This document shows positions 26,801-59,300 of a DNA stretch of 64,000 nt, one piece after another. The position numbers and the translations under genes are program-made. The stretch is from Dimorphilus gyrociliatus (Eukaryota > Animalia > Annelida), in contig CAJFCJ010000016.1 of assembly GCA_904063045.1 (NCBI GenBank), positions 1 through 64,000 on the forward strand, given 5' to 3'. The notes under the pieces were generated by a model. That model was not told where the DNA came from, ran no database searches, and saw only the letters and a list, made by a program, of their open reading frames with translations. Every line of letters begins with the position of its first letter. Positions within the stretch are counted from its first letter, which is position 1.

Positions 26801-29614
26801 AGCGGAGAAAAGGATTTAATGAGTTTGAGATTCTATTGTTTAAATTTGAAGAGAAATAGTAGCTGTGCATCATATCGTCCTATTTTAATTTGGAAGGGAA
26901 AAGAATTACCCTTAAATATCACTTTAGAATATAACGGAAATCCTCATTTTATTTTATTCACCTTAAAAGAAAATCAAACGGAGTTTAAGGTTCGTATAAT
27001 TCGAGTGTGAAAGCATAGTCAATTTGGACTAAAGAAGGAAATCAATTATGACCGTTGAAATACGGCAAATATAGCCTTGATTTTAATATATTTCTTGCCC
27101 CTGTTTACATTCTCTCAGTTGCCAGAGCGCTTTCAAACTTCTATTTATTTTAATATATTCGGGTCGCTGATATTTAAATACAAATCTTAATTTTCAGGTT
27201 GGAAAAAAAATCATCTCTTATTCGATGCGATCATGGGACAAAAAAAATATTAAATATTGGATTGACTCTATAACTATAGGAGATTTGCAGTTCACAGGAG
27301 ATATATCGAGTAAGAAATTAGTTTCACATATAATGTGTTCTTGACGTAAAATTTATTGCACTTTTCAAAGACGTGAAAATTAAAACGGGAACGGAAGTTA
27401 TCGAACCAATAGCTGAAATTTTCGAAAGACGGAATAACTTTGAAAAATTGAATAGCTTGTACTTTATCAATAGAAGCCTTATTGAGGAACCAATTCCTTT
27501 CTCCTCTAAGATTATGCTTGAGCCAAATCTTACATCAGTAACTTTATTTATTTAATCTCTTTCGAAAGAAAATTATTATTAAATCCTTCAAGAGTTTGTC
27601 GATATTCTATATCATTATTTGCAGATTATATTTAAACGTCCAATTTCCTCCAAAAATAAATCCTTTGGCGAATTCTTGATTCATGCAAATAAAGCTTTGA
27701 AGACTGTCCAGTCTGAAGGTAAAGCTCAAGATGGTGTTAAATTTCACTCCGTTATTGGTAAGTATTGAAACAAGCTATATTTTTACGAATAAATTTGGCG
27801 CCTTTATAATACGTTTGTTTCTTTAATGAATATGCTTTGAATACTAAAAAGTTAACACTAGCCTTGTATTCAAAGAACTAGATTATTTGTACCTTTATAT
27901 TTTACTACTATTTGAATGTTTCATGTCACATTTATCGCTTAAAATAGGAGTGGTGATATGTGTATCTACAATTGGCGTACTTGTTGCCATTCTCGGATTT
28001 GTTATCTATCGCTCTCGGCCAAGAAAACCAAAATATTGCAATACGGAAGAAACTGAAGGACTTATCGTTATGAATAGAACATTTAGAAGTAAGGAAAAGC
28101 TTGACGATCGTAAGTATGCGAATTTATTTTCGTACCATAGTAAATGTTAGTGTTTGATATTACTACCAGAAGCAGAGTGTGACTCGAATAGCGATGAGCC
28201 AAAGATAATTATATGTCCTAAAGTTCCAGGAAAACTTCCATCTTTCTATCCCGAAATAGAAAATTTCGTAAGTAACAATCTGAAATAAAATTTAATTCGC
28301 ATTATCTTCTATCTTATGAACAATATCAATAAAATTTGCAGCCAATGATAGATGAAGACGTCATAAGCCCTTTAATACCATCTAACGCAAAACAAAAACA
28401 AGCTGAAAGTGATTCTATAATCTCTTCTGAAGGACAATTAGAGTGGGACAACTCCTGTTTAAGTAAACCTAATCAGGTTGGCACTAATAATTGATAATAG
28501 AATCAAAGGGAAATTTTCAAGTAGCTACATATGGAGCGCAGAACGTTATCATAAAAAAAATTGCGATTGATAGTTATTCGTTTACGCATCTTTTAAAACT
28601 AAAAGTACTTGCCAGTCAGCTTATTGGAAATATCAAATCATACATTAAATATTCTTTCTATTGTTGATTATTAGACTATAATAGTTGTAGAATGCTTATT
28701 TAGTGCTACATCAACCATGTGATATGTTTTCTGCTTGGCCTATTTCAAATGATTATAAATCACACACACTTTGCTCTACAGATTGATCCAAATCTCTGGT
28801 GGGATCCTTACGCTTTAGAGCAAGATCACCAAGTAAGTTAGTTTGCTATCCTTCACTGTTCAATTCAAAGAAAATTTTTTTTTTTTTTTGATTTTAAAAG
28901 ATGATTTAAATGACTTGTAAAATTATTAAGTTTAATTTCGTATTTCAGAAGATGGACATAAAAGACAGTAGTGATAATATAAATAAAGCTATTCCGATGA
29001 GGGATATTGACGAGGATCTCTCAGATGGTTTTCCATCCGTAAGAAATTATATTGGGCAGTTTATATAGCTAACTAATTTTTTCTTTAGCAAATGAAATTA
29101 TTTCCTGTTGAAGTGGAAGTTCATTGTGAGCTTAAATCTATGGGATCTACCAATTCAGATGATTCCTGTCATTATGAAGAAACTGCATCTAAAGTATGAC
29201 TACAAAATTGCATATTGCACAAGATTTAAAATAATTTTATTGTAGGATGTGAGAGACCAATATATGCTGGCAGGAAAATACAGTTCATCGTCAAGTAGCG
29301 AAGAAAGCTTGTTTGAGAAAAAAGGTGAAGCCAACTTCCTTGATGACTCAGCAAAACTCGACAAAGATACTCTCGAAAAAATAAATGCTGAATTTAATGA
29401 GCACTATTCAGATAATGTGCAAAATGAAGACAATAAACAAAGTGAAATTGAAGATGCTAATATACGCTTCAACTCATACTATTCAGACGACAATGCAAAA
29501 TCCATAAACGACCATCAAACAAACGGTGAAATTAGTAAGAATGTAAATGAATCTACAAGTGGAGTACCAATAGATAATGATGCTATGGAGAGGAAAAGGC
29601 TTCGTTTTAAGTAG
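20875..29614 (+). CDS. Neurexin/Caspr/axotactin-superfamily single-pass receptor (LamG and EGF repeats, fibrinogen-like module, TM, long acidic tail)
   Basis: Signal peptide MKKTNLFVVLSIFLLG; LamG motifs (LNDNRWHKI, FDIRTFSENG, FIGCL); EGF repeats (C..GICINRYDHIECDCFGTKYYGDTC); Caspr-type SCQEYADIGLNETGFYLMDLD; TM IGVVICVSTIGVLVAILGFVIY. Confidence 0.8.
25574..25768 (+). other. Putative 195-nt phase-1/phase-1 cassette exon inside a LamG domain
   Basis: Acceptor aaaag|TC and donor G|gtataa; open in the frame of both flanking exons. Confidence 0.55.
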
Positions 29615-29818
29615 CAGTGTCATTTAGTTTTCTTCTTTCTGCCGAATTACATGTTAAAGGGAACAGCTAATTTATAATATATTGTAATATAATATATACT
29701 CTGCTGAATAGTTGATCTTGACCGTTTATTATAGATATTTAAATAAATAAGTATATAAACATTATGTACAAGGAGTCAATATAGATATTTAAAATTAATT
29801 GTAAAGTTCTATCGAACG

Positions 29819-31491
29819 TCAATAAAAAGACAATAGCATGGTACAATAGTATCTTTGATCATTCTTTACATCTCTACCTGTGCAAGTAATGTTTGATGGA
29901 TATTTTTCCATCAATATATAAATATTGTTTATTCTGTTGGAGTAGGTACAATTGGGATAAATTAATCTATCATCAATTGCTTTGAACATTGGTGGCTTGA
30001 ATTGCCTCGAATTATTATTAACGCGTAGGGTATCGGGACAAATTTCATTTTCAGGTACTGGGCCATCATATTGACCTACAAACAAGAGGCGTGTATGAAA
30101 TTTGATAACAAATAAAGAATATGGAAAATAATACTATAACAAGTATCCAAGTCATTTCCAGAGAAAAGTAAAGTATCGTTTATCATTTCGCATCGTCGTA
30201 CTTCGCAGCAAGATTTATAATCAAGAGGAACAATGAAAGATTCTTCGCAAGTATAGAAGCAAGTTTCGTTCGAACCATGACCGGAACAATTAACATATCC
30301 ATGCCTTGGTTTTGGAATTCGTTTACAAGACTTTGAGTTTTGTGAGAAGCTCACTAGAAATTTAAATAGAAATCGTAAAGTCAACTTATTCAAAAGAGAC
30401 GTACTTGTCCTTGCTGCTATACTTTTTCTGATACTTGTTGAATAGGGGGCATAAGTTGTCCGATTGGTAATAAAATCTATAAAATTAGACTTAATTGTAG
30501 ATCCTTCTGCAGCCATTTTACACTCAATATAACGATATTGATCTCTTAAAAGCGGAGTTGTGTGAAGTTCCGAAATAATTTTCCATTCAAATTGATATTT
30601 TCCAAGGAGGCATTTGATGCGAATTCTTCTTCGATTCTTTTTATAATATAGTTCAAGTTTACCTTTACAGAAAGCCTCGCATTCGGAATTAATTATATAT
30701 TTATTCCCACAATTAAAATTTACTGAACCATGTTTAAGTTGATTAGAAGAACATTCACTATGCATATTAACTATAAATATTTATATATATATATATATAT
30801 AATACAATATACAGTATATTCAATCTATGATAACTTGATCTGCAACTATATACGTATTGAAATATCTTACTTTTTATTCCAAATTTTATAATGCAACTAT
30901 TTTCGTAACCTAATTTATCGTAAACTGACCAGATAGAATAATAAATCCACGTATGACTTCCTTGATGGAACTCAATGGATCTATTCTTAATGAAATTAGG
31001 CTTAAGATTATTATAAAGGCTATTAGAGCAAATTCTCTTGGAACCAGCTCTATAGGCAGGTTTAAAATATTTTCCTTTTTGACAGGATTGTTTAGGTATA
31101 GGATAGCATCTCATTTTAGAAGAGTAAATATGGAAAAAAGTAACGTTTGATGGACAAATATAATAATCATCTCCACCTGAATAGAATAAGAAGGATAAGG
31201 AGAGAGAAAACAAAATTAAGAAGATTAACTTTAGTCTAAAAATATTCCATACATAATTCCTTGTGTCCTTGAATCTCTTCTTTAGAAATCAACCTAGACT
31301 TTTCAACACCTGTTTGTATTACTATAAAAAGAATATGAATTTATATATATATCTAATATATGCATATAAATATTAATTTGCTTACGTATTGAAATAGTTA
31401 TTATAACAGATACGGCTGTTATAAAGGTACTAAAGTAGGTTACACAATCATTGAACTTTGCGTAAAAATTATTATTATCCTTATTTAGCAT
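29819..31491 (-). CDS. N-terminally anchored HYR-like / sushi protein (HYR-sushi-S/T linker-sushi-HYR)
   Basis: Exons join by phase-1 introns: MLNKD...VTYFSTFITAVSVIITISI/LIQ...KEL/CGDDYYICPSNVTF...SIWSVYDKLGYENSCIIKF; sushi CKRIPKPRHGYVNC...TCFYTCEE; terminal ICPDT...TCTGRDVKNDQRYYC. Confidence 0.7.
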
Positions 31492-31576
31492 AATTTCAAA
31501 AGAAAGAAAGTAAAATATTCAAATTATTGAAAAATAATAACAAAATAAAGAAAGAAATAAGTAAAAAACAAATAAA

Positions 31577-34292
31577 ATGAAGTCCTTTTTTAGTAAATTG
31601 AAAAAAGGTTTCAGCTCTAATTATAGATCTTCTGAGTTTTGGATACAGTACTTGGTCGTAATAGCCCTATTTCTCAGCTTGGTGTCACTAATTTCACGTA
31701 TTTATTATATTATTATTGTTATTAAAAATAAGAAAAAGAAAGATATAATTGTCCTTCTCCCATTTCCTCTCTATTTCCAAGGCTTTCTAGTCGATTTTGA
31801 AACGGAAAGCATAAAGTTTTGTGACTTTAAATGCCCCAAACAGCGTCTAAACGTCGAGATTGACAGAGAGGCGTGTTATGAAACGCCTAAATGCAATTGC
31901 TGGTACGTTTCTCTTCTTCTATTGGGATATATTTGTGAAAATCACGTGATTGAGGCCCTCATACTTGTGCCTTAATGGATCGAAGGGCAAACTCAATAAT
32001 CCTCATAAACCTATATATAAACTGTAGAGCAGATAAATACAAAAAAGGTTTTGAGGGGAGGGGTTTAAAAAAGAAAACAGTTGCGTGATGTCCACTAAAT
32101 ATTTCCATCAAAAGAAGAAAAGAGTACATCATAGTATATTTTAAAGGGTAGTAGGAAAATGGAAATGACAAAAAAAAGTGAAGTAGGCCTATTATGATGT
32201 TCATTTCAGCAAGTTAATGGCATTTAAGTATGGTTTAAGGCGTTGTGAAGAACCTAAACAAGATGGAATATTCCAGAGTATTTGGCAGTACAGATTAGAA
32301 GGAGATTACAAAATTCACGAATGCATAATTGAAATTTACGTAAGACGGCCAAAGTATAAGGCAATTTATTCGTCAAGTATGGTTAATTTGTCGACAATTC
32401 ATACAACTTTATTACCTGGTAAACAAATTAAATTCATTTTGAATAAGTAAAAAGAGATAAAAAAAAATCATGTTAGACGCCTCCCCCTTTTTAGACGCTT
32501 TTTGTTTTCTTTTAAAAAAAATTCTGTTCTCTTTATTCAATTTTGTAAATAAGAACATCTCGCTTACTAATTTAGTTAAACTGTGCAAAGAACCAAAACC
32601 TATTAGAAACGGCGAAGTCGAATGTCTCGCTAGTAGAAGGGGAGAGAAAAATCAATATGAAGAAGGTACAAGATGCTTATACAGGTGCAATAAGAATTAC
32701 AAATTATCTAGGCTTAAGAAAGTTAAACACTTGGATTTTATTGAATGTAAAATTGACGATAAGAATAACGATCGACTGGGTTGGAGTAATGAATTAGACT
32801 CGAATGAAGCTGGTTGTGTTCGTATGTATATTTAGGTATTGAAAATCTAGAAGTCTTTTTCAACTTTAATTAAATTATAGAAGTGGAAGACTTTCCAGTT
32901 TGCTTCCAAAATTGTAATGCTAATGAAATAGTAAATAAGAGTATCTTACAAGGTTTTACAATATCTGAAAGAGAATTTTTTAACAAAATACCCAAGTTTA
33001 AAAATCGTCAGAATAGAACTCTTTCAACCAGATGTAATCCTCTACTGCCTAAAGAATTTCACAACAATCAATTTCTTCCCTACTATTATAGATGTTTCGC
33101 GGAAGACGACAAGATACAATCTAAATCAATTGACTATTGGATAACCCTTTATATTTATCGTACGAACATTTCTATTTCTTTTCGTTATCCCTTATTCTCT
33201 TCTCTCTTATCTTAAAAAGTTATATATAATATTTTTGGCCTAATTTTTACCCTTTCTTCTCCCTCTTTCTCCTACTTTAGCTATAATCTGCCCTAATCCT
33301 AAAAGTAGTTTGATTACTAAGGAGCATGGAATTAATCCAGTTGTCAAATGTGAAAGTTTATGGGATATTAATAAAGGCAATGCAAAGCTAAATCATTATC
33401 CTTTAAGAAGACATAGGCAATGTACCGAAACGTGTAGTAAGCAATATCACGTTTCCTCTTTTAGACATACTAGAATCGTTCACATATGTACTGATTATGG
33501 AAAGTGGCGCCCAAAATTTAAGAATGTTTTCTATTGCATGAGTAAGTTAACTAACTAACTAACCTCTCGTTAAAAAAGAAACACGAATAAGATAACTATA
33601 GATGGCGTTGTATTATTACATTAAAACTCACATTTCTGTTTGTTTTCTTTAGAAAAGCATCATCCAAGAATTTATATAGTAAATATGAAAATAAATAAAC
33701 ATAGCCATTTAAAAAGCAATTATTGCGGTTCAAAACTGGAACTTAAAGAAACTAGAAGATTAATTCTAAAATTATTTAATAAGAATATTATAAATAGATT
33801 TAAAACAATAAAAAAAATTGTAAAATGTGTAAAGTCTACAAATAATCTAAATTTAAGGATAATATTTAAAGTATTTATAAAATATTCGATAATACCAGAA
33901 TTTAGTAGAATATACTTTCTAATGGAACATTTTATTACTTCAACTTTTATAAATCATTTAAATAGTATTGAAAATAACTATTGGAATACAGGAAATAGTT
34001 CTTATGAATTTTTAATAAAATGCGATAAAAGGTTGCAAATTAACTTAAAATCTAAATATTGTAGTAAGTAATTCAATAAATTACTTATTCTTTTAATATA
34101 CTATATTTTTATATTTGTTAACTGTTTATAGTTGGCTGCCCTAAGGGTCATTTCTTTGATAAAGCTCAGTTGGAGTGTAAAAAATGTAAAAAGAATTATT
34201 TTCAAAGTGAAGATGAAAAAGGTTATTGTACTCCTTGTCCCAAATACTTTCAAACTGAATATGAAGGTTCTACAACATGCGTTCGAATTTAG
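31577..34292 (+). CDS. N-terminally anchored SVEP1-like module protein (HYR-sushi-HYR-sushi-spacer-ephrin-receptor-like Cys repeat)
   Basis: TM WIQYLVVIALFLSLVSLIS; sushi CKEPKPIRNGEVEC...GTRCLYRCNKNY; terminal GCPKGHFFDKAQLECKKCKKNYFQSEDEKGYCTPCPKYFQTEYEGSTTC. Mostly phase-1 introns; exon use in 31905-32209 unresolved. Confidence 0.72.
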
Positions 34293-34831
34293 ATTATGAA
34301 GTATTCTTTTCCTCATCTTCTAATTAATTAATAATAAGATTAGTTTTACTTATGATACTTAATACTTTCTAATTATAATTGTAATAGTTTCCCTATGATC
34401 TTACTCTATTTATAGACTAAATCCTCTTACATTTAAAAATAAATATTACTGTGTTACTTAGATGTAATTTTTACATTTTTTTTCATTATGTTTTTTTTAA
34501 ATAAAAAGAATAAAAAAGTTCTTTTTTTTTTATTAACAAAAAGTCTTTAATAGTTTTTTCCATGGAAAAAAATATCAACTATAAAATTCCGAAGACAAAT
34601 ATACTAATTTAGATGTCAAGGTCTTAGCTGTTTTGTAATCATTGTTAAATTCTATTAAATTTTCTAGTAAGTTTATCGAAAAATTATTAGCAATTTTTAT
34701 ATGTAAAATATTGATATTAAATATGATAAAAATAGTTTAGATTAACTTTGGAGAAACTATATATAATATATATGTTGCCTATTTTAGAGTGATTCTTTAA
34801 ATTTCGTTTCATACAGACTCCTGGTTATGAC

Positions 34832-37800
34832 ATGCTAAAGGAAATTATGAGAGGACTTGAAGATGATGCTACCGCTAGGCTAGCTAGTATTCGGTGCATG
34901 AAAAAGTGTATTAAGAATATTCGGGATGGACAGCCTTATCCAGCAAGCATGTGTCATGTTCCAAAGTACTACAAGTATAAAATAGGGCTCTTGGAACAAT
35001 CTCAAATTAAAGTATACGACGCTCCAGAAGGACAGGAAATAGATACATTACGCTGCTCTTCCACTTCTGTTTTGTACATTGATGGAGACGAAGTTTATAC
35101 TAGCTCAGGCATTTATGGGAAATTGATAAAGGTATTCGATTTCAATATCAGAAGAACAACAAGAACAAACTTTCTTTTCAGTTCAAATTATCTTCCACTG
35201 GTACTATAGCTGAGATCGATGGTTTTGTACAAATAGTTAGTGTTGACAAGGACACAAAGGCAACAGAATCTAATCTACACATGGTAGTAAAAGATGAACT
35301 AAGCCCTACTCTAAAAAATGTCTGCCTTTTTTTTAAATGCAAACATTACAGGTACGTTTGGCTTTAAATACTATAAATGTTATATAAAAGTATGTTGACT
35401 TTAAATATCTGAATATTATCTATTTAGTTGGCAGAAGGCTGTGGAAAACGAATTTTCGTGTGGCTCTCCTAAAGTCAACAATATGATTGAAAGTCATGAA
35501 GAAGCTACTACTGCTTTAGAAAAGTATCCCGATGGTTGGACATACGATCATGATATTGAACTTTTAAAATTTTTGTCTGATCCTGAAGTTTTGAAATACT
35601 GTGGACATGCTGAAACAACGAGAAAATCCATAAAAAATATAGATGTCTCCTCATATAGTGACAGTTATAGCGATAAAGATCATCTTATAGATGATAATCC
35701 TGAAACATTTTGGGAGAGCGACGATTCTTCTACTCATTGGATCCGATTAACAATGGAATATAATGTTATTATAAAGTAAGATGCCCATATTCCAAAAATT
35801 ACTTCTTTTAAATTCATTGAATAATAGATCCTTATCGGTCATGGTTGCTGAGGGTGACGATAATTACTTTCCTAAAAGAATATGCGTTAAAGTTGGACCA
35901 TCATTAGAAAAATTACAAGAAGTTCGAGAAACAAAGCTAAATTAGTAAGTCATCATAATCTATGCAATCATAATAATATATACACACGCAAACTAAACAT
36001 AATCTGTATTAACAGCACGTCAACCGTCGGAGTTCGAGAGGTAACAATTCTTGGTGAACAATTAGAATTCCATCCTATTATTCAAATTGAAATTAAAGAG
36101 TGTATGGGTATGTACTAAATAATAATCACGTAATGAAGTTATCTTCTCTTGTTAAAAAAATGTAACATTTAACATTTAGAAGATGGTATTGATACTAGAA
36201 TTAGGGGTATTAAAGTAAGAATTGAAAAGAAGAGAAGTCAAGAATTAGCTGTATATACATTCAAAGACATTATGGAAGTAAAATTTCCCAGGCTTATAGA
36301 TTTTGACCTTGCTATTTTGAGACGAAGGGTACTGCTATTAACGAGGTGAAAAAATTTGATTATAATCAAAATGTTTTTTCAACATCTTCATGTTTTTTAA
36401 AGACTGGTAGCTCTATTCGAAAGTGTCGCCAAGTTCTTAATACCGAACTGGAATAATAAGCCTACTGAACCCTGCAAATTGATACAATTAATGAAGCCTT
36501 TCTATTCGCTATCGGTAAAAAGATTAGATATTGTTGAGGAGCTTCTTCACCTATCCGAATACGATAATTCAAATGGCGAGTGCCCATCTCTTCATATTAA
36601 TAGGCTAAGTAAGACTGAGCATAGAGCTGATCCAAGAGCTGATCCTGAATGTCGAAAAACGGTATTTGTTCAAGTGTATGATGGCTTATTGAAAGCAGAT
36701 TTAGAAAATTTCGATTATAGGTAGAGTTTTCATTAGTTATAATATAAGTGCTTTATTAAGCCTTATTTCTCTTTTTACTATAGATGGGGATCAAATAGTA
36801 GATCCCAATGGTGGGAATGCAAATTTACTCAAGAAGGAATTATTGATCAAGGAGGAGGATTTAGAGATAGTCTATCTGATATTGCTGAAGAGCTCTGCCC
36901 TCCCGCTGATAGTCCTGATTTACTTCCACTGTTCGTTAGAGCTCCAAACCAAAGAAATGCGTCAATGAATATATATAAAGATGCCTTCGTGCCTAGTCCC
37001 TCTTGTACATGGTTTAAACGTTACGAATGGTTAGGTAAATTAATGGGAGCGTGCTTCCGTAGTAAAGAGAATCTTGTGCTGAATCTCAGTCCCTTTGTTT
37101 GGAAAAAGCTATGTGGAGAGCCAGTCAGCTGGAACGATTTCGCAACTGTTGATGATAGTGATGTTAAAGTTTTAAATTCTATTGAATCTATGAGTGAAGA
37201 AGAATTTCAGGCTTTTTTCGGAGGTGAAGTGTATTGGACGGCCATATTTAGTGATGGAAGCGAAGTTGAACTTAGTTTAGATGGATCACATACTCCTGTA
37301 ACATATGAGGAAAGAATTGATTATTGTAACGCAGTTAAAAGAGTAAGAATGGCGGAAAGCGACAAACAAATAGATGCTATTAGACGAGGTCTTCTAAGCG
37401 TTGTTCCTCAATCGGCACTTGATCTTCTTAATTGGGAAGAAGCTGAAAGAAGGGTTTGCGGTGCTGCAGAAATAACTATGGATTCCCTAAAGAGTTCTAG
37501 TAATTTTTTCTATTATTTTTTTTTACTTTCAATTAATTAACATTGTAATTGTTTTCAAAAGCTCACTTTGAAGAACTTATGGAAAATGATTCGAGAACAA
37601 AATATATGTGGATGGCTCTTGAAAATTTTAACGATGATGAAAGAAGCCGATTCTTGAGATTTGTTACTGGACGAAAGCGATTGCCCGCCCCGGTTTATAT
37701 ATGTTCGCTCAAAAATGGAAATGAGGAAGATATCGACTCTCTTCCAGAATCTTCAACATGTTCAAATACACTTTATTTGCCTAAATATTCTAGGTATTAC

Positions 37801-37967
37801 TAAATTATTAATCAATAATTTTTTAATAGTTTTCAAAACTTCTTTTTTCTCTGTATATATATATTTCTATGTTTAACAGCTCTTCCAAATGCGAGGAAAA
37901 ACTACGATATGCCATCTACAATTGCTTGGCGATAGATGCTGATATGATGCCTTATGATATGGAATAA
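34832..37967 (+). CDS. HECTD3: E3 ubiquitin ligase HECTD3 (DOC plus HECT)
   Basis: DOC domain IDVSSYS...[15 protein letters not shown]; [32 protein letters not shown]; [15 protein letters not shown]; [14 protein letters not shown]. Confidence 0.95.
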
Positions 37968-38338
37968 TTATCGATGGTAATATTTTCTACAAAGCTGTAT
38001 GCACTCTCATTAAATATTTCAAATAGTCAAATCTGGACAAATGAATTTAAATCTCAAAATTAATTTATTTTAAAATATACTTTGATATGATTATTTTTGG
38101 GCTCATTAATGCTGGCATACCAACAAACACAATTTTATTTTATCTATACGACATGTAATACTTAAAATTTTATGCCATTCAAGTTATATATTGTTCTATA
38201 TTGTTTATTGAAGTAATATTTTAATAAATTACTGAAATGAAAACTTTCGTTCAATGGGTTCGATAGGAATATATGGAATACGTAACCATATTTCGAAATA
38301 GTCAACGAATCACTTTTCTCCACCTGAAGATAACTAAA

Positions 38339-40910
38339 ATGGAGGCTATGCGGTGTATTTTATTTTTTATCACTGTCACAACAAGTATTTACGCTCTACC
38401 TAAATCAAAAGAGGTTATTATATAGTTTATACGATGCTAAAATAATACTTTAAGTAAAAATAATGCAAATTATTGTTTTCTTGAATTTTTAGTTGCACCT
38501 CAACGATAGGGTTCAATCGCTATTAGATTGGAGCAATCGAAGACCAGTTATTAGGCTAGATGGAAACAAATTTCGTCAATATGTACGACAAGGACCTAGG
38601 AACTATTCCGTAGTTTTGATGCTTACTGCTTTGGCTTCTGAACGCCAATGCTCTGTCTGCAGGTAAGCTTTATTCTTCTGATAATAAAACCATTTTTATC
38701 TTCCTCTAAAAAGAATAATCTTATGGAATATTAAAACAGTCAAATTAGCTATAACCCATACATATTTTTCCTTAATATTGAATATTTAGATAAGAGCCAT
38801 GCAAAAGATCCATAACATTATTTCCTTATTTGCCACGTTGATAATAACGCTATATAGCATTACGTATAAAAACAATGGAAGAACAAAATGGAAAATTTTT
38901 TTCCAACACTTTCTCACAATGCAATTAATTAATTAAATTTTTATTTCTCTGAAAGACATGCTAATGATGAATTCCTAATTGTTGCCAACTCTTGGAGATA
39001 TAGTCAAGCCTACTCATCAAGGATTTTCTTTGCTATGGTTGATTATGATGAAGGAGCTGACGTATTTACATCTGTAAGATTTATTTATAATGTCTATGTT
39101 CCTTTTTATCATACGTTTATCATTACATTTTTAGTTAAAACTTAACTCTGCCCCAACTTTCATGCACTTTCCTCCCAAAGGAAAGTCTAAGAAAGGTGAC
39201 ACCATGGATTTAAATAGGTAATATACTAATAATTTTTAATAAGAAAGTAGAATCGTTAATCGTATATTCAAAAACTTGTGTTTTCTATTTTAGAGTTGGA
39301 TTCGCAGCTGAACAGATAGCAAGATGGGTTCAAGAGCGAACAGACGTTCACGTTAGTTTATTTTATCAAGCTGAATCAACCGTCTTCTTAAACATAAAAA
39401 TACTTTTTCTAAATAGATTAGAGTCTTCAGACCGCCTAGTTATTCCGGAACTCTTGCTTTAGCTTTACTCTTTTCTCTGATTGGTGGCCTCTTATATTTA
39501 AAGAGAAATAGTTTGGACTTTTTATACAACAGAAACTCGTGGGGGATTGCTGCTCTTGTAAGCCTTAGAATTATCTAAAATATCTTTAAATTTCATAAAA
39601 AAAATTTTCAGTCAATTATATTCGCAATGATTTCTGGTCAAATGTGGAATCATATAAGAGGACCTCCTTTCTTACACAGTAATCCTCAAACTGGTCAAAC
39701 AGTAAGTATCAGAATACGTATATTTTTTTAGTTAAGAATTCAATAAGCCAGAGTCCTTAAGTTTATTTAAGTAATAATAAATTAGATAGTAGAGTTTTGT
39801 AAATTGGTTTGAAATTAACATCAACCAAATGAGAGAAATTTCGTATTACAGAGTCTTAATCTTATTCCTCCATTTAATGTGACTGAAAAATAATGTTAAA
39901 TGTTATATAACCTAATGACATATTTATTGTCAAAGAAATTAAAAGGATCATACACTTTTCAGCTCTTCATTCACTCTAGCAGTCAAGCTCAATTTATTAT
40001 CGAAACCTACATCGTTATCGTATTATGTATCCTTCTCACATTTGTTATGCGTATAGCTGCCATATTTTTAGGATGCTAGCTTTTTGTGGTAATTTGGTTC
40101 ATATATTGCTTCTCTATAGCGCTTAATTTTTTTTCGCTACTTAAAGCTCAATTAGCTTGGCATGATAATTCTTTTATTTAAATTAATCATTTATTTAATA
40201 TAATTTTTTTAACATTAAAGCACACATTAGTTAGTTTCTTACTCTTTAATTTAATTATAATAGATTAAATTGTTCCATCCTTTTTCTTTTTAACATTCAT
40301 TTCAGATGTATATTGTACGCGATTCTGATTATCAATTTATTTTTGAGACTTTAATTGTTGCTGCACTGTGTATCCCTTTTTCAATTGTTTTAGTTCTAGT
40401 AAGTAGAAACTGCTTTTATACTTTTTATTTCCCTTCCCTGTTTATTATTATTATTTTTATTATTATTATTATTGCTATTAATTTGCCTTTTCTAGCATTT
40501 ATTGAAGTTTCATTGCTATATTATCAATTTAGTATGTTAATTAAACTATATAAAGGTTATATAACAAAAAACAAAAAAAGGTATTCCTTAACAAAATTTC
40601 AAAGATTCGGCAGTTGTAATTGGAATGATTGTACTGAACGAAGCACCAGAAATGAAGGTTGACGCTAAAAAGAGGAAAAGTTAGTTATTATCATTTAACT
40701 GTTATATACAATACTTAATACGTTGATGTATATATTTTGCAGTTATGTGCTTTGTTGGATTGGGTACAGTGGCTTTCTTCTTTAGTATAATTCTTTCTAT
40801 TTTTAGAGCCAAATACATGGGATATCCGTACAGGTTTATATAATAAAATTATTCTTCCTTCTGTAAGCTTAATATTTGAATTTTTTTCATTCAGTTTCTT
40901 ACTAAAGTAA
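38339..40910 (+). CDS. TUSC3: Oligosaccharyltransferase thioredoxin-like subunit (TUSC3/MAGT1, OST3/OST6 family)
   Basis: Signal peptide; [22 protein letters not shown] (CxxC); [10 protein letters not shown]; [11 protein letters not shown]; [12 protein letters not shown]; [13 protein letters not shown]. Confidence 0.93.
39963..40026 (+). other. TUSC3/MAGT1 alternative exon A (canonical-like) with U12-type donor
   Basis: 64 nt, [21 protein letters not shown]; acceptor ttttcag; donor GTATCCTTC at 40027. Confidence 0.85.
40306..40369 (+). other. TUSC3/MAGT1 alternative exon B (divergent duplicate) with U12-like donor
   Basis: 64 nt, [21 protein letters not shown]; pyrimidine-rich acceptor ...tttcag; donor GTATCCCTT at 40370. 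Confidence 0.8.
40584..40592 (+). other. U12 (minor spliceosome) branch point
   Basis: TTCCTTAAC lies 12 nt before the exon start at 40605, with no polypyrimidine tract (aaaatttcaaag). Confidence 0.85.
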
Positions 40911-41182
40911 AGAAGAAAAAGAGAAGAGAACGTATGATAATTGACTATGAATTTTTAAATGTAATTTTCCTATGTTAATTGTCCTGTATTATTATGTTGC
41001 ATAAATAAATTTTTCTTGATGAGTTTATTTAAAGATAGATGAAATATAACAAGAAAACAAACAATTAATGTGACTAAAGTAACATCTCTTTTAAACTGAA
41101 TTGTAAAAAATAAGAACGTTAACTTGATGAGTGAATATAGAATTTATTTTTTATACGCGTTTTAGACCAGAGCTTATCAGGG

Positions 41183-41255
41183 GGTTTCGTAGTGTAGCGG
41201 TTATCACGCTCGCCTCACACGCGAGAGGTCCCGAGTTCGATCCTCGGCGAAACCA
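41183..41255 (+). tRNA. tRNA-Val (anticodon CAC)
   Basis: 73 nt; acceptor stem GGTTTCG/CGAAACC; anticodon arm CTCGC-CT CAC AC-GCGAG; T-loop GTTCGATC; oligo-T terminator shortly downstream. Confidence 0.95.
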
Positions 41256-47600: not shown

Positions 47601-50398
47601 TAAAAGAATAGAAAAATCAAAATGTTCATCATTAGAAATAGTTTTATCGCCTTCCATTGTCATTTCAGAATTATGAAAACGATATTCGACAGCTGTAAAG
47701 TTTAAATATAAAAAGAAATTATTGAATATATATATATATGTATTTATACATTACTTTTATTCATATCTGCTAATATCTTTTCATGATTTTCTTTATCTAA
47801 ACCATCAGCTAAATATCTCATATTTTGATGTAATATCTCACATTTTTCACTAAGTATACTAAGTAGTGTATCGCAATTGTCGGCTTGTTCAATTTGATTG
47901 ATAACAGTTCTTACTGATGGTATACCTTAAAATAATAATATTCCTTAACTAATTAGCATATATTTAAATATATTAGTGAATAATTTCATTAATGAAAGTT
48001 TTTTGTTTACATTGTAATAAATTCTTTAGAAATGTTGCTAAATTTTTATTAAAATCGTTAGGCTCCGATTGATTTATAATAGATTTAGCAACGGTACAAA
48101 CTCTCCCAGTTTTCCCGAGAACAGCCTTAACATCTGCCAATAGTTTGAATGAAATTTGTGTGCATTTACAAATACTATCAATTTCATTATTTAATTGATT
48201 ATCTGAAAGAAAAATGCAAAGAAAGAAGAACATTAAATGCTAATAAAACAATAGAATAAGTAAACTTTACTTGTCAATAAGATGAATTTATTTGGATCTG
48301 TTATCTTATCAATAGTAATGATAAGATTTTTTACGCAATCCGACCATTCATTCCTTAGTAGTTTAATTTGCTAGATGAAATAATAAAAACAATATTGTAT
48401 ATATGGATAACCTAAAATAGAACAATTTTACTAGAATTGCATCTTTATTCTTCTTATTTGCATGGCAAAGTAGTATTGCTGGTATTAATTCTGGATCCAA
48501 TGCTTCCAACTGTTGAACAGCTGTTTGAATTACTTTAACCTCTGTAGTGTATAATGAAAATATATAATTGCTGATCGTAAAATTACTAATTTTATGGCAC
48601 TGTAAGATATTTACTCGATGTATCAGGACAACTAGCCGATACTAGTCTAGACGCTTGACATATCATATCAGAATGACTATGGAAGTTCTCTATTAAATCA
48701 TCCAAAGTATTTCCGGTTGGAGCATTACAAACTGAAATCTATTTATATATAAAAAGATTAAATTATACCTTATAAACTTATTAGAAAAAAAGACAAACTT
48801 CGCTCAATAGAACTCTTTTTATAACTCTATCAAGAGGTTCGACGCTTTCTTTAAAAGCGTCAATAATTAATCCAAGTACTGCACCATTTACTTGTCTTTC
48901 TAAATGCTGAAGTCCTTCTTGAACAATTGCTTTAATATCCGGTAATTTGTCTCTATAATCAAATATATAATTAAGTTGATACAAATATTGCATTAAAAAA
49001 AAGAAAAACAATGTTTGTAACCTATTTTCAACTTCTAAACATTGCAGATATTTATTTTTAGCTTGTAAAACAATTTGAGAGATTTTTTTAATAGAATCTT
49101 TAAAGCACTCATTTGCCGCATGACCAACAGTTAATGAATGCCTTAATATACTATTAATTTCATTAGTTATATCATCATTCGTCGATAACCTTTCCATAGC
49201 CTTTAAAAATGACAATGAAAAAGATATTAGTTTGTTTACATATATAGAATATTAGAATTTATTACTAGATCGATTGTTAGAGTAAAACAACCAGCTTCTT
49301 CGACGTTAATAGAATCATTATCGTCATCTTCATTAATTAGATATCGTCCTTCAATCGCTTTTCGAATTTCTCTTAATGATTTTTTCATTTGAGCAACAGC
49401 AAAATCTTCTGATAGCTATTGATTGGAAGAAAGATGCATATTATCACATTTTATCATTAGGAAATAATCTATATTTATCGATATATCTTTTACTTGACGT
49501 TTTAGTTTATCAGATGAAGATTTCCGGTATATCGCGCGTAATCCTTCGCAAAGTAACGGTATATTTCTTTTAAACGTTGAAATAGATACATTTAAAGCTT
49601 GCTTTTGTTTAGCTTTGCGTAAATTTTTCGTTCGATTATCGCATAAATCCACCATTTCGATAGAAGTTTTATAGATTTTCTTTAAAATATAAATAGTATT
49701 ATATTATAGACATTTTTAATAGATAAAAATATATCAACTTTTAAATCGGAGGCTAATTCTTTCTGATGTTCTCTCGATAGTAAACTGTTCAAGTCCTCTT
49801 CTATTTGTTCAGTCATATTCACTATTTTCTTTATATCTCTCTCATCAGCTATCAAAAGGACTTTTATTAAACTTTCTACAACATCTTTTATTGATCTTGT
49901 TAACTGTCTAAATGAGCTTGTATCTTCCAAACTATAGGTTAGCTTCTTTGAACAGACTAGAAAATTTTCAGAATTCTCTGTTAAAGTAAAAGATGCCGCT
50001 TGCAACTTATTCTTTAATGTCTAAAATTATTAAAATCGTATTAAGAGATAGACTAAAAGTAGAATAGAGGTAATTTTGAGAACATACCTCATCACTTATA
50101 GATTTAGATAGCTTCAAAGCTGCTTTCGAAGCCGCTTTACATTTTGCAAAGAATTGGCAACCCTTCTCTTCTATGTATTCAGCTGAACAACGTCGAGAAT
50201 TTTTCTCCCCTAGCAGGATCAATTGAGATACCTATAAAATTTTTTTAAAATTTCAATTGTACCGAGCGATAATATAAAATTGTTGACAAAACTCTAGTTT
50301 CTAACAATACGACTTACTTGTGATAGTATTGGAGCTATGGATTGTTCAATTGATTTAGTTGGTACTCGATTCGATACTAATGCATTTATTTCATCCAT
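44699..50398 (-). CDS. Divergent alpha-catenin/vinculin-superfamily helical-bundle protein, many exons
   Basis: RVPTKSIEQSIAPILSQ/VSQLI resembles vinculin HTRTIESILEPVAQQI and catenin TLAVERLLEPLVTQV. LIKVLLIADERDIKKI and RNIPLL resemble the alpha-catenin N-domain VTRLLILADMADV and KNVPIL. Last exon ends ...SLTKVGTF*. Confidence 0.65.
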
Positions 50399-56358: not shown

Positions 56359-59300
56359 ATGGCAGATCAATTACGTTTTGATGGAAAAGTTGTACTTGTT
56401 ACAGGAGCTGGTGGAGGTACGCTACTATTGAGTGCATTTTTAAAGTGGATTGCATGCTTATTGCTCTTTTATTTAGCCTTTTAACTCTTAAGTCTGCAAA
56501 GTCAAAAAGCGGGTCATGTTGTTAAACTATTTTAAGGCAATAGAATAGCTTAATATAGTTGTCAATTTTTACAGTTTATTTCTTAAAGTGTAATTTAATA
56601 ACAGAATTTTAGTATTTAAGTAACAAACAATGTATAGTTTCTTGTATTTCTGATTTACTTAACATTTTCGAAGGTTCGAAGTATAACTCAAAATTTCTCA
56701 CTTAGTTATTCAATTAAATAGAGACATTTAAATAGAATATTCTATGTATTTATTTTAAGATAATTAAAATATAATGCTTGTTAAAATTAGGTTGAAAAGA
56801 GTAATATTTAATTTTCACAAGTTTCAAAAAGGAGGTCAATTTTACATTATTCTATTTTAAATAGGTTTAGGAAGAGAGTATGCTTTGGAATTCGCTAGAA
56901 GGGGAGCATCTGTTGTTGGTAAGCAGAATTATTAAATAATTTTTAATCAGCACATGTTGACATAATCAGACTACCCCCAATAGTAAATGATTTGGGTGGC
57001 GATATAAAGGGTGGAGGCAAGAGCTCTGTAGCAGCTGATAAAGTCGTTGATGAAATTAGAAAGGCAGGAGGAAAAGCTGTTGCAAACTATGGTAAATATA
57101 AATAATATATATTTGTAATTAAGAATTATTTAGAAGTATAAATAAATTATGATTTTACTGGTAAACTAGAACTTTGTACTTTAAACTTTTAGATTTTAAA
57201 GATAATAGTAATAAAAAATGTTAATCCATCGATACTGTATACTAAATGTGAGGAGATAATAATGTAGTTACATAGATTAAAATCTGTATTGCATACAGGT
57301 ACGAATTCTTGGAAAAGTATCTATATCTTGATTATTTTCTTTTGATGCTTAGATTCTGTTGAAGATGGTGAAAAAGTGGTTCAAACTGCATTGGACCATT
57401 ATGGAGGCATTGATATTGTTGTTAACAATGCTGGTATCCTTAGAGATCGTTCTTTCCTCCGTACTAGCGACGCCGACTGGGGTCTGCATCTATATTCTGT
57501 ATTTTTCTTTTTATCAATTAATAGTCTCTTTCATATTTTTTCCAATCAGATATTGTACACAGAGTTCATCTCCGAGGTGCATTTAAAGTAACTAGAGCTG
57601 CTTGGAGTCATATGAGAGAAAAGAAATTTGGGCGTGTCATCATGACTTCTTCTGATGCAGGAATTTTCGGAAACAGAGGACAGGCTAACTATAGCGCTGC
57701 TAAACTAGGTTTATACGGATTCAGCAACACATTAGCTATTGAAGGCGCGAAAAACAATATTTATTGTAACACAATTGCTCCAACTGCTGGATCTCGGCTT
57801 ACAAAGACTGTAATGCCTGATGGTTTGTTGATAATTTACATGAAGTTTTCAAATAGATGACATCTTTTAAATTCATTTTTCTGTAATAGAAGTAATCAAT
57901 GTACTCAAACCGGAGTATGTTGCACCTCTTGTTATTTACCTATGTCACGAATCATCCCAAGAAAATGGCGGACTATTCGAAGTTGGTGGTGGATATGTTA
58001 CAAAATGTATGTACTATACTTTAAACAGAAATTTATCATCTTTTTTAAAACATTATCCAATAATAGTAAGATGGCAGAGAGCTGGTGGAGCTGTAGTAAG
58101 AAAGAAGGGTGTTCAAATGACTGCCGAACAAGGTAAGTTAAAATTTAAATTATTTTAATTTAACATTACAATAACTCTAAAATATTAACAGTAAGAGACT
58201 GCTGGAATGATATCGTCGACTTTGAAACAAATCCTGACTATCCTGTTAACATATCAAGTAAAATTTATTAATCAAAATTCTAAAAATTGTGCAAATTAAG
58301 CAACTCTGAATTATATTCTTAGCTGATGGAGCTGGAAGAATCCTCTCTATAATTGATCAAATCGAAAACCCCGAAGATCCAAATGCTTATCCGAATCCTG
58401 GCGGAAAGGGTCCTGTAAGTTTAAGAAATTTTCTCTCTTTTTATTTTTGACTGATGATAGAAATTTTTATTCTTCTTGTAGGAGGCAGCTATTGGTTCAA
58501 AAATGAGAATAGAAAATGTTGAATTAAGCACTAGAGATGCAATGTTATATGCCTTATCCATCGGTGTTTCAACAACACAAGAGAATCATTTGAAATTCGC
58601 TTACGAGAATTCTGAAGACTTTTCAGTTATTCCAACAATGTCTGTTTGTCTGGCCTTTCCAGTTATGCCAGGAATTATGAAATCGGATGCTGTAAGCATC
58701 GATTATACTCAACTTTTGCACGGGGAACAATATACTGAGTGTTTCAAACCTTTGAAATCGGATGAAAAATATTCTATTGAAGGAGAATTGGTTGATGTTT
58801 TAGATAAAGGAAAGGGTGCTATCTTTATCACCGAAGGTAAGGTTCATTTCTTCTCTACAATATTGAAATTTAATAATTACAAACTGTTTTCCAGCCAAAA
58901 TGTTTGATAAGAATGAAGAATTGGTTTCTCTTAACCAATTCACTACCTTCGTCAGAGGGGCTGGTGGATTTGGTGGTAAACGAGATTCGACTGTTGCTAA
59001 ACAACCGCTTCCCACACCTGATCGCCAACCAGATGCAGTTGTTTCGGAAAAGACCAGTTTAGATCAGGTTTATAAAACATTATTGATATCTGTATTTGTA
59101 TGCTCATTGATATTTTTCTTCCAATAGGCTGCTCTCTATAGACTTTCCGGTGATTACAATCCTCTTCATATAGATCCAAACTTTAGTGCAATGGGAGGTT
59201 AGTTAAATATGGTATTTCGAATTACTGAAATTTTAAAAACACCTATCTCATATAGGTTTCGAAAAACCAATTTTGCATGGACTTTGCTCATATGGCTTTG

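What the first reader, a model, noticed from the sequence alone, without database searches (positions are those of the whole stretch)
39963..40604. Mutually exclusive exon pair in TUSC3/MAGT1 apparently enforced by a U2/U12 spliceosome switch
Seen: two 64-nt homologous exons (A 39963-40026 [21 protein letters not shown]; B 40306-40369 [21 protein letters not shown]). Both take the upstream U2 donor (gtaagt) through U2-style tttcag acceptors. Both end in U12-type donors (GTATCCTT, GTATCCCT). The shared downstream acceptor has a consensus U12 branch point TTCCTTAAC and no pyrimidine tract. The 279-nt A-B intron is thus a U12-donor/U2-acceptor hybrid that should not splice, and double inclusion would frameshift. 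Established: this hybrid logic is known from vertebrate JNK genes and is rare; I do not recall it described for an OST3/OST6 gene. Inference: one gene may make two OST-B accessory subunits, with the minor spliceosome regulating N-glycosylation.
Basis: partly seen in the sequence, partly recalled or inferred. Interest (0 to 1): 0.92.

Follow-up and report, generated by a model that had tools for sequence, protein, structure and literature searches.

The report
Duplicated TUSC3 exon beside minor intron
A glycosylation-helper gene (TUSC3/MAGT1 type) carries two alternative copies of one small exon wired so that only one can normally end up in the message. The same wiring occurs in annelids, molluscs and a brachiopod, but in this animal only copy A is seen in finished messages so far.

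Summary
Exons A (39963-40026) and B (40306-40369) are homologous 64-nt exons. Each has a U2-type acceptor and a GTATCC donor, and they share a U12-type acceptor (TTCCTTAAC, 13-14 nt before the AG, no pyrimidine tract).

RNA contigs show upstream exon->A and A->40605 splicing exactly as predicted. No contig joins the upstream exon to B, or B to 40605. In a 90-95% identical relative, B is conserved (both differences whose positions were listed are synonymous). There it is joined to A through a cryptic U2-type donor 25 nt past A's U12 donor, at about 7% of A-containing RNA, which creates a stop codon.

The design is not private to this genome. Owenia, an unnamed ENA assembly (three copies), Lingula and Pecten have the same tandem exons with GTATC donors and one U12 acceptor. 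RefSeq isoform pairs in Octopus, Sepia, Pecten and Mytilus differ only in this segment. Sponge, anemone and nemertean have one exon with the same U12 intron.

Human TUSC3 and MAGT1 are already listed as minor-intron genes, and the hybrid-intron logic is known from JNK genes.

Verdict: a new member of a known kind. Productive use of B in this species is unproven.

The parts
38334..41014 (+). TUSC3/MAGT1-like (OST3/OST6) gene with 11 exons. The predicted product is 326 aa, with a signal peptide, a thioredoxin-like domain with CSVC, and a C-terminal membrane part.
   Evidence: Spliced RNA contigs; Pfam PF04756 on individual exons; assembled CDS and 60-75% identity to animal TUSC3/MAGT1 proteins.
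39612..39701 (+). Constitutive upstream exon, followed by the U2-type donor GTAAGT at 39702-39707.
   Evidence: Sequence. Joint 39701->39963 is GT..AG, at depth 2278 in X4 and also in X1; the relative X2/X3 shows the equivalent joint placed at 39700->39963.
39963..40026 (+). Exon A, the canonical variant ([21 protein letters not shown]). It is the default exon in all RNA runs.
   Evidence: It is 15/21 identical to the A-type exons of Owenia, Lineus and L001, 11-13/21 to the other A-type exons compared and 9/21 to Sycon.
40027..40034 (+). U12-type 5' splice site GTATCCTT of exon A.
   Evidence: It is used with the 40605 acceptor: a 578-nt intron, GT..AG joint, at depth 1813 in X4, 354-362 in X2/X3 and 7.6 in X1.
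40027..40305 (+). The 279-nt 'hybrid' intron between A and B, with a U12 donor at its 5' end and a U2-type pyrimidine tract plus CAG at its 3' end.
   Evidence: Sequence. No joint 40026->40306 appears in any run.
40051..40056 (+). GTATAG, a candidate cryptic U2-type donor 24 nt after exon A. The equivalent site, 25 nt after A, is the one joined to exon B in the related species.
   Evidence: In X2/X3 a 55-nt unitig (last 30 nt of A plus 25 nt of intron, depth 34.8) branches into a contig that runs straight into 40306 (depth 25.6). The position of the site in the window is an inference.
40306..40369 (+). Exon B, the divergent variant ([21 protein letters not shown]).
   Evidence: It is conserved in the relative (3 differences in 65 nt; the two whose positions were listed, 40347 and 40366, are synonymous). 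Its closest counterparts are the Lingula upstream exon (13/21) and L001 copy 2 (11/21).
40370..40377 (+). U12-like 5' splice site GTATCCCT of exon B, with one mismatch to the consensus at +7.
   Evidence: No use of it is seen in contigs. In the relative, the X3 contig runs on into the retained intron, and the X2 contig stops exactly at 40369.
40584..40592 (+). U12 branch-point consensus TTCCTTAAC, 13-14 nt upstream of the 3' splice site, with no pyrimidine tract.
   Evidence: The same element lies at the same place in Lingula, Owenia, Lineus and Pecten; Sycon and Exaiptasia carry close variants (TTCCTTGAC, TCTTTAAC) and L001 only CTTAAC.
40605..40679 (+). Shared downstream exon. It completes the split codon (T+AT = Tyr after either A or B).

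Best explanation
This is a tandem-duplicated exon cluster sitting on the ancient U12-type intron of the TUSC3/MAGT1 (OST3/6) gene.

The upstream exon has a U2 donor. Each copy, A and B, has a U2-type acceptor and a U12-type donor, and there is a single U12-type acceptor at 40605. The only productive routes are therefore upstream->A (U2) plus A->40605 (U12), or upstream->B (U2) plus B->40605 (U12). The A-B intron mixes a U12 donor with a U2 acceptor and cannot be removed as such. Including both exons or neither breaks the frame.

In this animal A is the default: it has the perfect donor GTATCCTT and accounts for about 98% or more of the message. B has the weaker donor GTATCCCT. It is a conserved alternative that would replace the end of the luminal loop and the first half of the third membrane helix (human MAGT1 residues 255-275). 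B is probably used rarely, or in particular cells or stages.

Shown: the anatomy, A-route splicing, conservation of B, functionality of B's acceptor in a close relative, the same design in four other animals, and annotated isoform pairs in molluscs that differ only in this segment.

Inferred: dependence on the minor spliceosome, productive use of B in this species, and any functional difference between the two proteins.
For: - Sequence anatomy and frames.
- Both exons hit the same Pfam OST3_OST6 positions.
- RNA joints upstream->A and A->40605 appear in X1, X2/X3 and X4, and no 40026->40306 joint appears anywhere.
- In the relative (X2/X3), B's acceptor is used with a cryptic donor 25 nt downstream rather than with A's U12 donor. 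This is what spliceosome incompatibility predicts.
- B has 3 differences in 65 nt against the relative, and the two whose positions were listed are synonymous. Constitutive exons differ by about 7%, and the intron becomes unalignable 42 nt past B.
- The same design (64-nt or 58-nt tandem exons, pyrimidine-tract acceptors, GTATC donors, one CCTTAAC-type acceptor; only CTTAAC in L001) occurs in L001/L002 with three copies, Pecten, Owenia and Lingula.
- RefSeq and other database isoform pairs in Octopus (3 species), Sepia, Pecten and Mytilus (2 species) differ only in this segment.
- A single exon with a U12-type intron at the same place occurs in Sycon, Exaiptasia and Lineus.
- Human TUSC3 and MAGT1 are listed as minor-intron genes (PMC7507305).
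- The JNK precedent and its mechanism are in PMC1874599.
Against: - No contig joins 39701->40306 or 40369->40605 in any of the four RNA or RNA-like runs.
- In the same-species run X4, one unbroken contig at pre-mRNA depth (22.5, against 1300-2300 for exons) runs through B.
- In the relative, B-containing RNA is joined to A (TGA at the junction). In X3 it keeps the intron after B at the same depth, so most B-containing RNA there is non-productive.
- A search of the protein collection with the exon-B reading frame found nothing.
- Contigs drop rare variants, so absence is weak evidence. No raw-read run was available.
- No minor-spliceosome snRNA gene could be looked for outside the window.
- B's donor has a mismatch at +7.
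Confidence: 0.58

Rival explanations
1. B is not a protein-coding alternative here but a regulatory or 'poison' exon. It is included after A through the cryptic U2-type donor about 24-25 nt past A's U12 donor. That gives a stop codon and an unproductive, probably nuclear-retained or NMD-targeted RNA, which tunes TUSC3 output or competes with slow U12 splicing.
For: In the relative, the only B-containing species seen is A+25 nt->B. Its depth is 25.6 against 354 for A->40605. It has TGA at the junction, and in X3 the downstream intron is retained at the same depth. No upstream->B joint appears in any run.
Against: - A poison exon does not need an intact 21-codon frame, an exact 64-nt length, family-conserved residues (QF..ET.IV..L) or a U12 donor.
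- Both differences from the relative whose positions were listed are synonymous.
- Counterpart exons in molluscs are annotated as in-frame alternatives.
- The A+25->B form is not seen in the window species itself (X4, X1).
Confidence: 0.2
2. B is a relic: a once-functional duplicate that is no longer used in this compact genome and survives by inertia. Its appearance in RNA is just pre-mRNA and splicing noise.
For: In X4, B is at intron-retention depth within one unbroken contig. B's donor deviates from the consensus. Lineus has no duplicate at all, which shows either loss or that the duplication never happened there.
Against: - A and B are saturated at synonymous sites (8/21 third positions identical). 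Yet B keeps its frame, length, phase, acceptor tract and GTATCC donor.
- B is at least as conserved against the relative as constitutive exons, while the surrounding intron is unalignable.
- A compact genome with 55-80-nt introns would be expected to delete dead sequence.
Confidence: 0.14
3. Mutual exclusion is real, but it is enforced mainly by something other than spliceosome incompatibility: the reading frame plus NMD, or competing RNA structures. On this view the GTATCC donors are simply inherited from the duplicated unit.
For: - Double inclusion and double skipping both shift the frame.
- A palindromic GTTATATAAC motif occurs upstream of A and just before the U12 branch site.
- Hatje et al. 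found frame incompatibility far more common than U2/U12 incompatibility in human clusters (PMC5740500).
Against: - The inverted repeats are short, AT-rich and not shown to be conserved.
- All six alternative exons examined in five species keep GTATC donors, and the shared acceptor keeps a U12 branch site without a pyrimidine tract. That is hard to explain unless U12 splicing is required.
- The cryptic-donor product in the relative shows that the U2 machinery avoids A's own donor.
Confidence: 0.08

Closest known systems
Vertebrate JNK (MAPK8/9/10) exon 6a/6b mutually exclusive pair with a U2-U12 hybrid intron (Letunic 2002; Chang et al. 2007, PMC1874599)
   Same: - Two homologous tandem exons.
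- U2-type intron upstream and U12-type intron downstream.
- The intron between them has a U12 5' splice site and a U2-type 3' end.
- It is thought to have arisen by duplication of one exon with parts of its flanking introns.
   Different: - A different gene family and a different clade (protostome invertebrates).
- Up to three copies (L001).
- Alternative exons carry weakened GTATC donors.
- Here only one exon is seen in mature mRNA so far. In a relative, a cryptic U2 donor bypasses the block.
U12-type intron of human TUSC3 and MAGT1 (both listed among 699 minor-intron genes, PMC7507305)
   Same: - The same gene family.
- A U12-type intron follows the 64-nt exon encoding YIHGSSQxQF in sponge, anemone, nemertean, annelid, brachiopod and mollusc orthologues examined here.
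   Different: - The position of the human U12 intron was not checked here.
- No tandem duplicate of this exon was seen in the vertebrate proteins listed; the MXE paper searched does not mention either gene.
RefSeq isoform pairs of TUSC3-like genes in molluscs (Octopus sinensis, O. bimaculoides and O. vulgaris, Pecten maximus, Mytilus trossulus and M. galloprovincialis, Sepia pharaonis)
   Same: - Isoforms differ only in this 19-22-residue segment.
- In Pecten the alternative exon has a pyrimidine-tract acceptor, a GTATCTTT donor and the shared CCTTAAC acceptor.
   Different: - Annotation only; I found no publication.
- The alternative exons are very divergent from window B (6-8/21 for the gap-free comparisons).
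- In Sepia (from the order in the double-inclusion model P0301) and in Lingula the divergent copy lies upstream of the canonical one.
Drosophila prospero twintron and other U2/U12 competition cases (reviewed in PMC6865273, PMC8329584)
   Same: A U2-type donor a short distance downstream of a U12-type donor competes for the same transcript. That resembles the cryptic donor used in the relative.
   Different: In prospero both products are productive and no duplicated exon is involved. Details of prospero are recalled from memory and the reviews, not tested here.

Membership tests
U2/U12 hybrid-intron mutually exclusive exon cluster (JNK type) | Two or more homologous tandem exons of equal length and phase | tested here: met
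   A and B are both 64 nt and in the same phase, with 10/21 aa identical. Both hit Pfam OST3_OST6 positions 219/220-239.
U2/U12 hybrid-intron mutually exclusive exon cluster (JNK type) | U2-type upstream donor and a U2-type acceptor (pyrimidine tract + YAG) on each alternative exon | tested here: met
   GTAAGT lies at 39702, with ttttcag before A and tcctttttctttttaacattcatttcag before B. Upstream->A is spliced. B's acceptor is used with a non-U12 donor in the relative.
U2/U12 hybrid-intron mutually exclusive exon cluster (JNK type) | U12-type 5' splice site after each alternative exon | tested here: met
   The donors are GTATCCTT (A) and GTATCCCT (B, one mismatch). This rests on the sequence consensus only; no position-weight scoring such as intronIC was available.
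U2/U12 hybrid-intron mutually exclusive exon cluster (JNK type) | One shared downstream U12-type 3' end (branch-site consensus 10-15 nt from the AG, no pyrimidine tract) | tested here: met
   TTCCTTAAC is at 40584-40592 and the AG at 40603-40604, in an A-rich context. The A->40605 joint is present in all RNA runs.
U2/U12 hybrid-intron mutually exclusive exon cluster (JNK type) | The hybrid intron is not spliced from its own U12 donor to the U2 acceptor | tested here: met
   No 40026->40306 joint appears in X1-X4. The relative uses a donor 25 nt downstream instead. The evidence is from contigs only, so rare events could be missed.
U2/U12 hybrid-intron mutually exclusive exon cluster (JNK type) | Both exons appear, one at a time, in mature mRNA | tested here: inconclusive
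   Only A is seen here. No upstream->B or B->40605 contig was found. In mollusc orthologues the condition is met, by annotated isoforms. No raw reads were available.
U2/U12 hybrid-intron mutually exclusive exon cluster (JNK type) | Dependence on U11/U12/U4atac/U6atac snRNPs | not testable with these tools
   Rfam on the window found nothing, and the rest of the genome cannot be searched. Other first-stage notes report U12-type introns elsewhere in this genome (unchecked).
OST3/OST6 family (TUSC3/MAGT1 subunit of the STT3B oligosaccharyltransferase) | Pfam PF04756 match over the protein, a thioredoxin-like domain with CxxC, and a C-terminal multi-helix membrane part | tested here: met
   Exon-wise Pfam hits cover profile positions 2-294. 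A CSVC motif is present, the product is 326 aa, and it is 60-75% identical to animal TUSC3/MAGT1. A homologue aligns end to end with 6S7T chain H. Membership in an OST complex was not tested.
U12-type (minor) intron | RTATCCTT 5' splice site plus TCCTTAAC branch site near the 3' end, conserved at the same position in orthologues | tested here: met
   The window meets this. The same intron type at the same place occurs in Sycon, Exaiptasia, Lineus, Owenia and Lingula, Pecten and L001.

The most novel reading that the evidence does not exclude
Lophotrochozoans (at least annelids, molluscs and brachiopods) have a single TUSC3/MAGT1 gene. In place of paralogues they use an old, or repeatedly re-invented, exon cluster locked by U2/U12 incompatibility. 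It would make two or three OST accessory subunits that differ in the otherwise near-invariant YIHGSSQxQF loop/helix-3 segment.

The differing order of canonical and divergent copies in different phyla would mean that any tandem duplication of an exon flanked by a U2 and a U12 intron becomes mutually exclusive at once. This would make minor introns a recurrent seed of such switches.
Probability: 0.35. Interest if true: 0.7.

Novelty: new member of a known kind. Interest (0 to 1): 0.55.

Why it matters
Mutual exclusion by spliceosome incompatibility is textbook but rests on very few cases: the vertebrate JNK genes, and five of 629 human clusters in PMC5740500.

A second, independent family would be a natural test bed for how such switches arise and are regulated. 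This one is conserved or recurrent across invertebrate phyla, and it has copies with graded U12 donor strength.

It also suggests that the oligosaccharyltransferase accessory subunit is diversified in its membrane part, not only in its thioredoxin domain.

For genome annotation, gene predictors can mishandle these U12 donors. Two database models (a nematode protein and a Sepia double-inclusion model) carry extra residues exactly at this exon boundary.

Tried and rejected
1. Searching the 5.8-billion protein collection with the stop-free frame that starts at exon B (window:40306-40659, residues 1-40) found no candidate. The length window excluded full-length isoforms.
2. The full spliced isoform A or B protein has no reference and was not typed in. 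The direct search for an annotated B isoform of this species was therefore left out.
3. Run X9 turned out to be a bisulfite-type library (only C>T and G>A changes). It was useless for divergence.
4. Locus L003 (P0008) has introns too long to reach the exon. The shorter isoforms P0323 and P0317 are not on record. The Mytilus gene is too long to fetch.
5. Rfam on the window gave no hit, so no snRNA evidence.
6. The other GTATCCTT in the window (57434) lies inside coding sequence (…NNAGILRD…). TTCCTTAAC at 47941 has no matching donor. Neither was taken to be a U12 intron.
7. Inverted repeats around the cluster are short and AT-rich. I did not accept them as selector or docking elements.
8. Orthology of the divergent exons across phyla could not be resolved from 21 residues. 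Window B matches the Lingula upstream exon at 13/21, but it also matches canonical exons at 9-11/21.
9. The organism could not be named from the coded run labels. Protein similarity (Paralvinella 75%, Lineus 71%, Owenia 70%) and the compact genome point to a small annelid. This is inference only.
Full report
**1. What is in the sequence**

The + strand between 38334 and 41014 carries an 11-exon gene. Its exons match Pfam OST3_OST6 one after another. The assembled 326-residue product is 60-75% identical to animal TUSC3/MAGT1 proteins.

The finding's coordinates are exact.
- Exon A is 39963-40026 and exon B is 40306-40369. Both are 64 nt, with 21 codons plus one base.
- A follows ttttcag. B follows a pyrimidine tract plus tttcag.
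- A is followed by GTATCCTT and B by GTATCCCT.
- The next exon starts at 40605, behind ...ggtaTTCCTTAACaaaatttcaaag. This is an A-rich stretch without a pyrimidine tract, and the branch-site adenosines lie 13-14 nt from the AG.

A and B are 32/64 identical in DNA and 10/21 in protein. Third codon positions are no better conserved than the others (8/21), so the duplication is old. Each exon alone matches the same positions (219/220-239) of the family profile.

Each of the two donor 8-mers occurs only twice on this strand of the 64-kb window, and GTATCC occurs nine times. Two hits placed exactly at the ends of two homologous exons are therefore not chance. The other GTATCCTT, at 57434, lies inside coding sequence.

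Including both exons, or neither, shifts the frame into early stops.

**2. What the RNA shows**

Four RNA or RNA-like runs were laid on the gene, as assembled contigs only.

In the window's own species, X4 is over 99% identical and X1 is a coral metatranscriptome.
- Contigs join 39701->39963 and 40026->40605 with GT..AG ends. Depths in X4 are 2278 and 1813.
- The predicted U12-type intron of 578 nt, which contains exon B, is therefore really removed from A's donor.
- Unspliced RNA sits at depth 16-22. One unbroken contig (40035-40434, depth 22.5) runs through exon B. B shows no enrichment, and no junction of its own survived assembly.

A relative that is 90-95% identical (X2 and X3, one sample) also joins A to 40605, at depth 354-362. 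It additionally holds a chain of three contigs.
- A 55-nt unitig consists of the last 30 nt of A plus 25 nt of intron (GTATCCTTCTTCTATTTGTTAAATG), at depth 34.8.
- It branches into a contig that continues directly with exon B from 40306, at depth 25.6.
- In X3 that contig runs on through B into about 170 nt of the following intron at the same depth. In X2 it stops exactly at 40369.

So in the relative about 7% of A-containing RNA (25.6 of 388) has been spliced from a cryptic donor 25 nt past A's U12 donor to B's acceptor. The window has GTATAG at the corresponding place, 40051. The product reads ...AAA TG|A, a stop at the junction.

This shows three things.
- B's acceptor works in vivo.
- It pairs with a non-U12 donor rather than with A's GTATCCTT, as incompatibility predicts.

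No contig in any run joins 39701->40306 or 40369->40605. Contigs drop rare variants and no raw-read run was offered, so this absence is weak evidence.

**3. Is B maintained?**

Against the relative, exon B has 3 differences in 65 nt. The two whose positions were listed, 40347 G>A (GAG>GAA) and 40366 C>T (CTG>TTG), are synonymous.

Constitutive exons differ by about 7% (54 of 754 nt). The 21 intron bases after A differ by 3, followed by an indel. The intron after B can be aligned for only 42 nt.

B also keeps the residues that the whole family conserves (Y-I, Q-F, E-T, I-V, L).

**4. The design is not private to this genome**

A profile search with one exon, followed by locus look-ups, gave orthologous loci.

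| Species / locus | Copies of the exon | Donors after each copy | Shared acceptor |
|---|---|---|---|
| Unnamed AT-rich ENA assembly (L001/L002; protein closest to annelids) | Three tandem 64-nt copies: HYIHGSSQGQFIVETYIVIFL, LYFHPYSDEQFVVETYLVAAL, SFFRKSSRSQYLAESYAVIFI; each behind a pyrimidine tract | GTATCCTTT, GTATCTTTA, GTATCTTTA | One, behind CTTAAC |
| Owenia (annelid) | Canonical copy plus a second 64-nt copy, HYIYPKGDMQLCAESYIIVGI | GTATCCTTT, GTATCTGAC | Behind TCCTTAAC |
| Lingula (brachiopod) | Divergent copy first (GYIVTRSDGQFIAETYIVLCL), then canonical copy | GTATCCTAA, GTATCCTTA | Behind TTCCTTAAC |
| Pecten (mollusc) | Canonical copy plus a 58-nt alternative | GTATCCTTA, GTATCTTTG | Behind CCTTAAC |

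Database isoform pairs differ only in this segment in Octopus sinensis, O. bimaculoides, O. vulgaris, Sepia pharaonis, Pecten maximus, Mytilus trossulus and M. galloprovincialis. In molluscs the swap is therefore annotated as mutually exclusive.

Sycon (sponge), Exaiptasia (anemone) and Lineus (nemertean) have one such exon, with a GTATCCT donor and a U12-like branch site (TTCCTTGAC in Sycon, TCTTTAAC in Exaiptasia, TTCCTTAAC in Lineus). The Priapulus gene has no introns.

The U12 intron is therefore ancient, and the duplication is seen only in the lophotrochozoans sampled.

Canonical exons are nearly invariant across the bilaterians and the cnidarian-like sequence compared (11-21/21; 8-12/21 to the sponge). 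The alternative exons are very divergent, also from one another. The order of copies differs between phyla. One old duplication and several independent ones cannot be told apart with 21 residues.

**5. Mechanism**

This part is inference from the established properties of the two spliceosomes.

The upstream U2 donor can pair with either U2-type acceptor. Whichever exon is chosen then uses its U12 donor with the only U12 acceptor, which removes the other copy.

A's perfect donor and B's weakened one would favour definition of A. In the other species the alternative donors read GTATCTTT, where C-to-U could still wobble-pair with U11 and U6atac. That last point comes from my own knowledge and was not tested.

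The segment exchanged corresponds to human MAGT1 255-275 in structure 6S7T chain H. This is the end of the loop after helix 2 and the first half of helix 3, including the YIHGSSQxQF motif conserved from sponge to human.

**6. Comparison with what is known**

- The hybrid-intron logic is established for vertebrate JNK genes, where its origin by exon duplication was already proposed (PMC1874599).
- Five of 629 human clusters are of this kind, and the paper does not mention TUSC3 or MAGT1 (PMC5740500).
- Human TUSC3 and MAGT1 are listed as minor-intron genes (PMC7507305).
- Full-text searches found no paper linking mutually exclusive exons to this family.

This is therefore a new member of a known kind. 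It is visible in RefSeq isoforms, but as far as I could find it has not been described.

**7. Verdict**

- The architecture, and the use of the A route, are solid.
- Comparative data make a working switch the best reading (about 0.6).
- Productive use of B in this species is not shown.
- A regulatory, non-productive role (about 0.2) or a relic (about 0.15) remain open.
- The claim that the minor spliceosome regulates N-glycosylation is speculation.

Other first-stage notes report further U12-type introns in this genome. I did not check them.

The organism is probably a small annelid with a compact genome. This is inferred from protein similarity and 55-80-nt introns, and it is not verified.

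Noticed in passing
window 41183-41255 (+): A tRNA-Val (CAC) gene lies about 170 nt downstream of the TUSC3-like 3' end. ARAGORN finds it, but the Rfam gathering scan of the window reported nothing.
   Followed up: partly
window about 34830-37970 (+): The upstream neighbour looks like a HECT-type ubiquitin ligase with an APC10/DOC-like domain (HECTD3-like). This comes from the ORF translations only.
   Followed up: no
L005 (Pecten maximus) 28997-33955: About 80 tandem copies of a 63-bp unit lie downstream of the exon encoding LLLSVFRSKYQGYPY. Each copy encodes LL[LR]SVFRSKYQGYPY, so this is a satellite derived from the penultimate coding exon of TUSC3-like.
   Followed up: no
L009 (Priapulus caudatus) 501-1505: The TUSC3-like gene of Priapulus is a single uninterrupted 334-codon ORF. 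It is intronless and possibly a retrocopy, so the U12 intron is gone there.
   Followed up: no
window 39894-39913 and 40554-40573: A palindromic GTTATATAAC-containing motif lies about 50 nt upstream of exon A and again just before the U12 branch site. The arms are 20 nt long and 85% complementary. Pairing would loop out both alternative exons. Conservation is unknown and the match may be chance in AT-rich DNA.
   Followed up: partly
run X9 on window 39600-40700: A 2024 DNA run with the window organism's label shows only C>T and G>A differences, so it is a bisulfite or enzymatic-conversion library. It could be used to read methylation over this gene.
   Followed up: no
proteins P0081 (Soboliphyme) and P0301 (Sepia pharaonis): These database models carry extra residues exactly at the end of this exon, or include both alternative exons. 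This looks like gene-prediction errors at the U12 donor.
   Followed up: no
window 40833-41035, as seen in X2/X3: In the related species the last intron and 3' exon are joined differently (40833->40921, with 27 other letters between). The C-terminal exon structure has diverged between the two close species.
   Followed up: no
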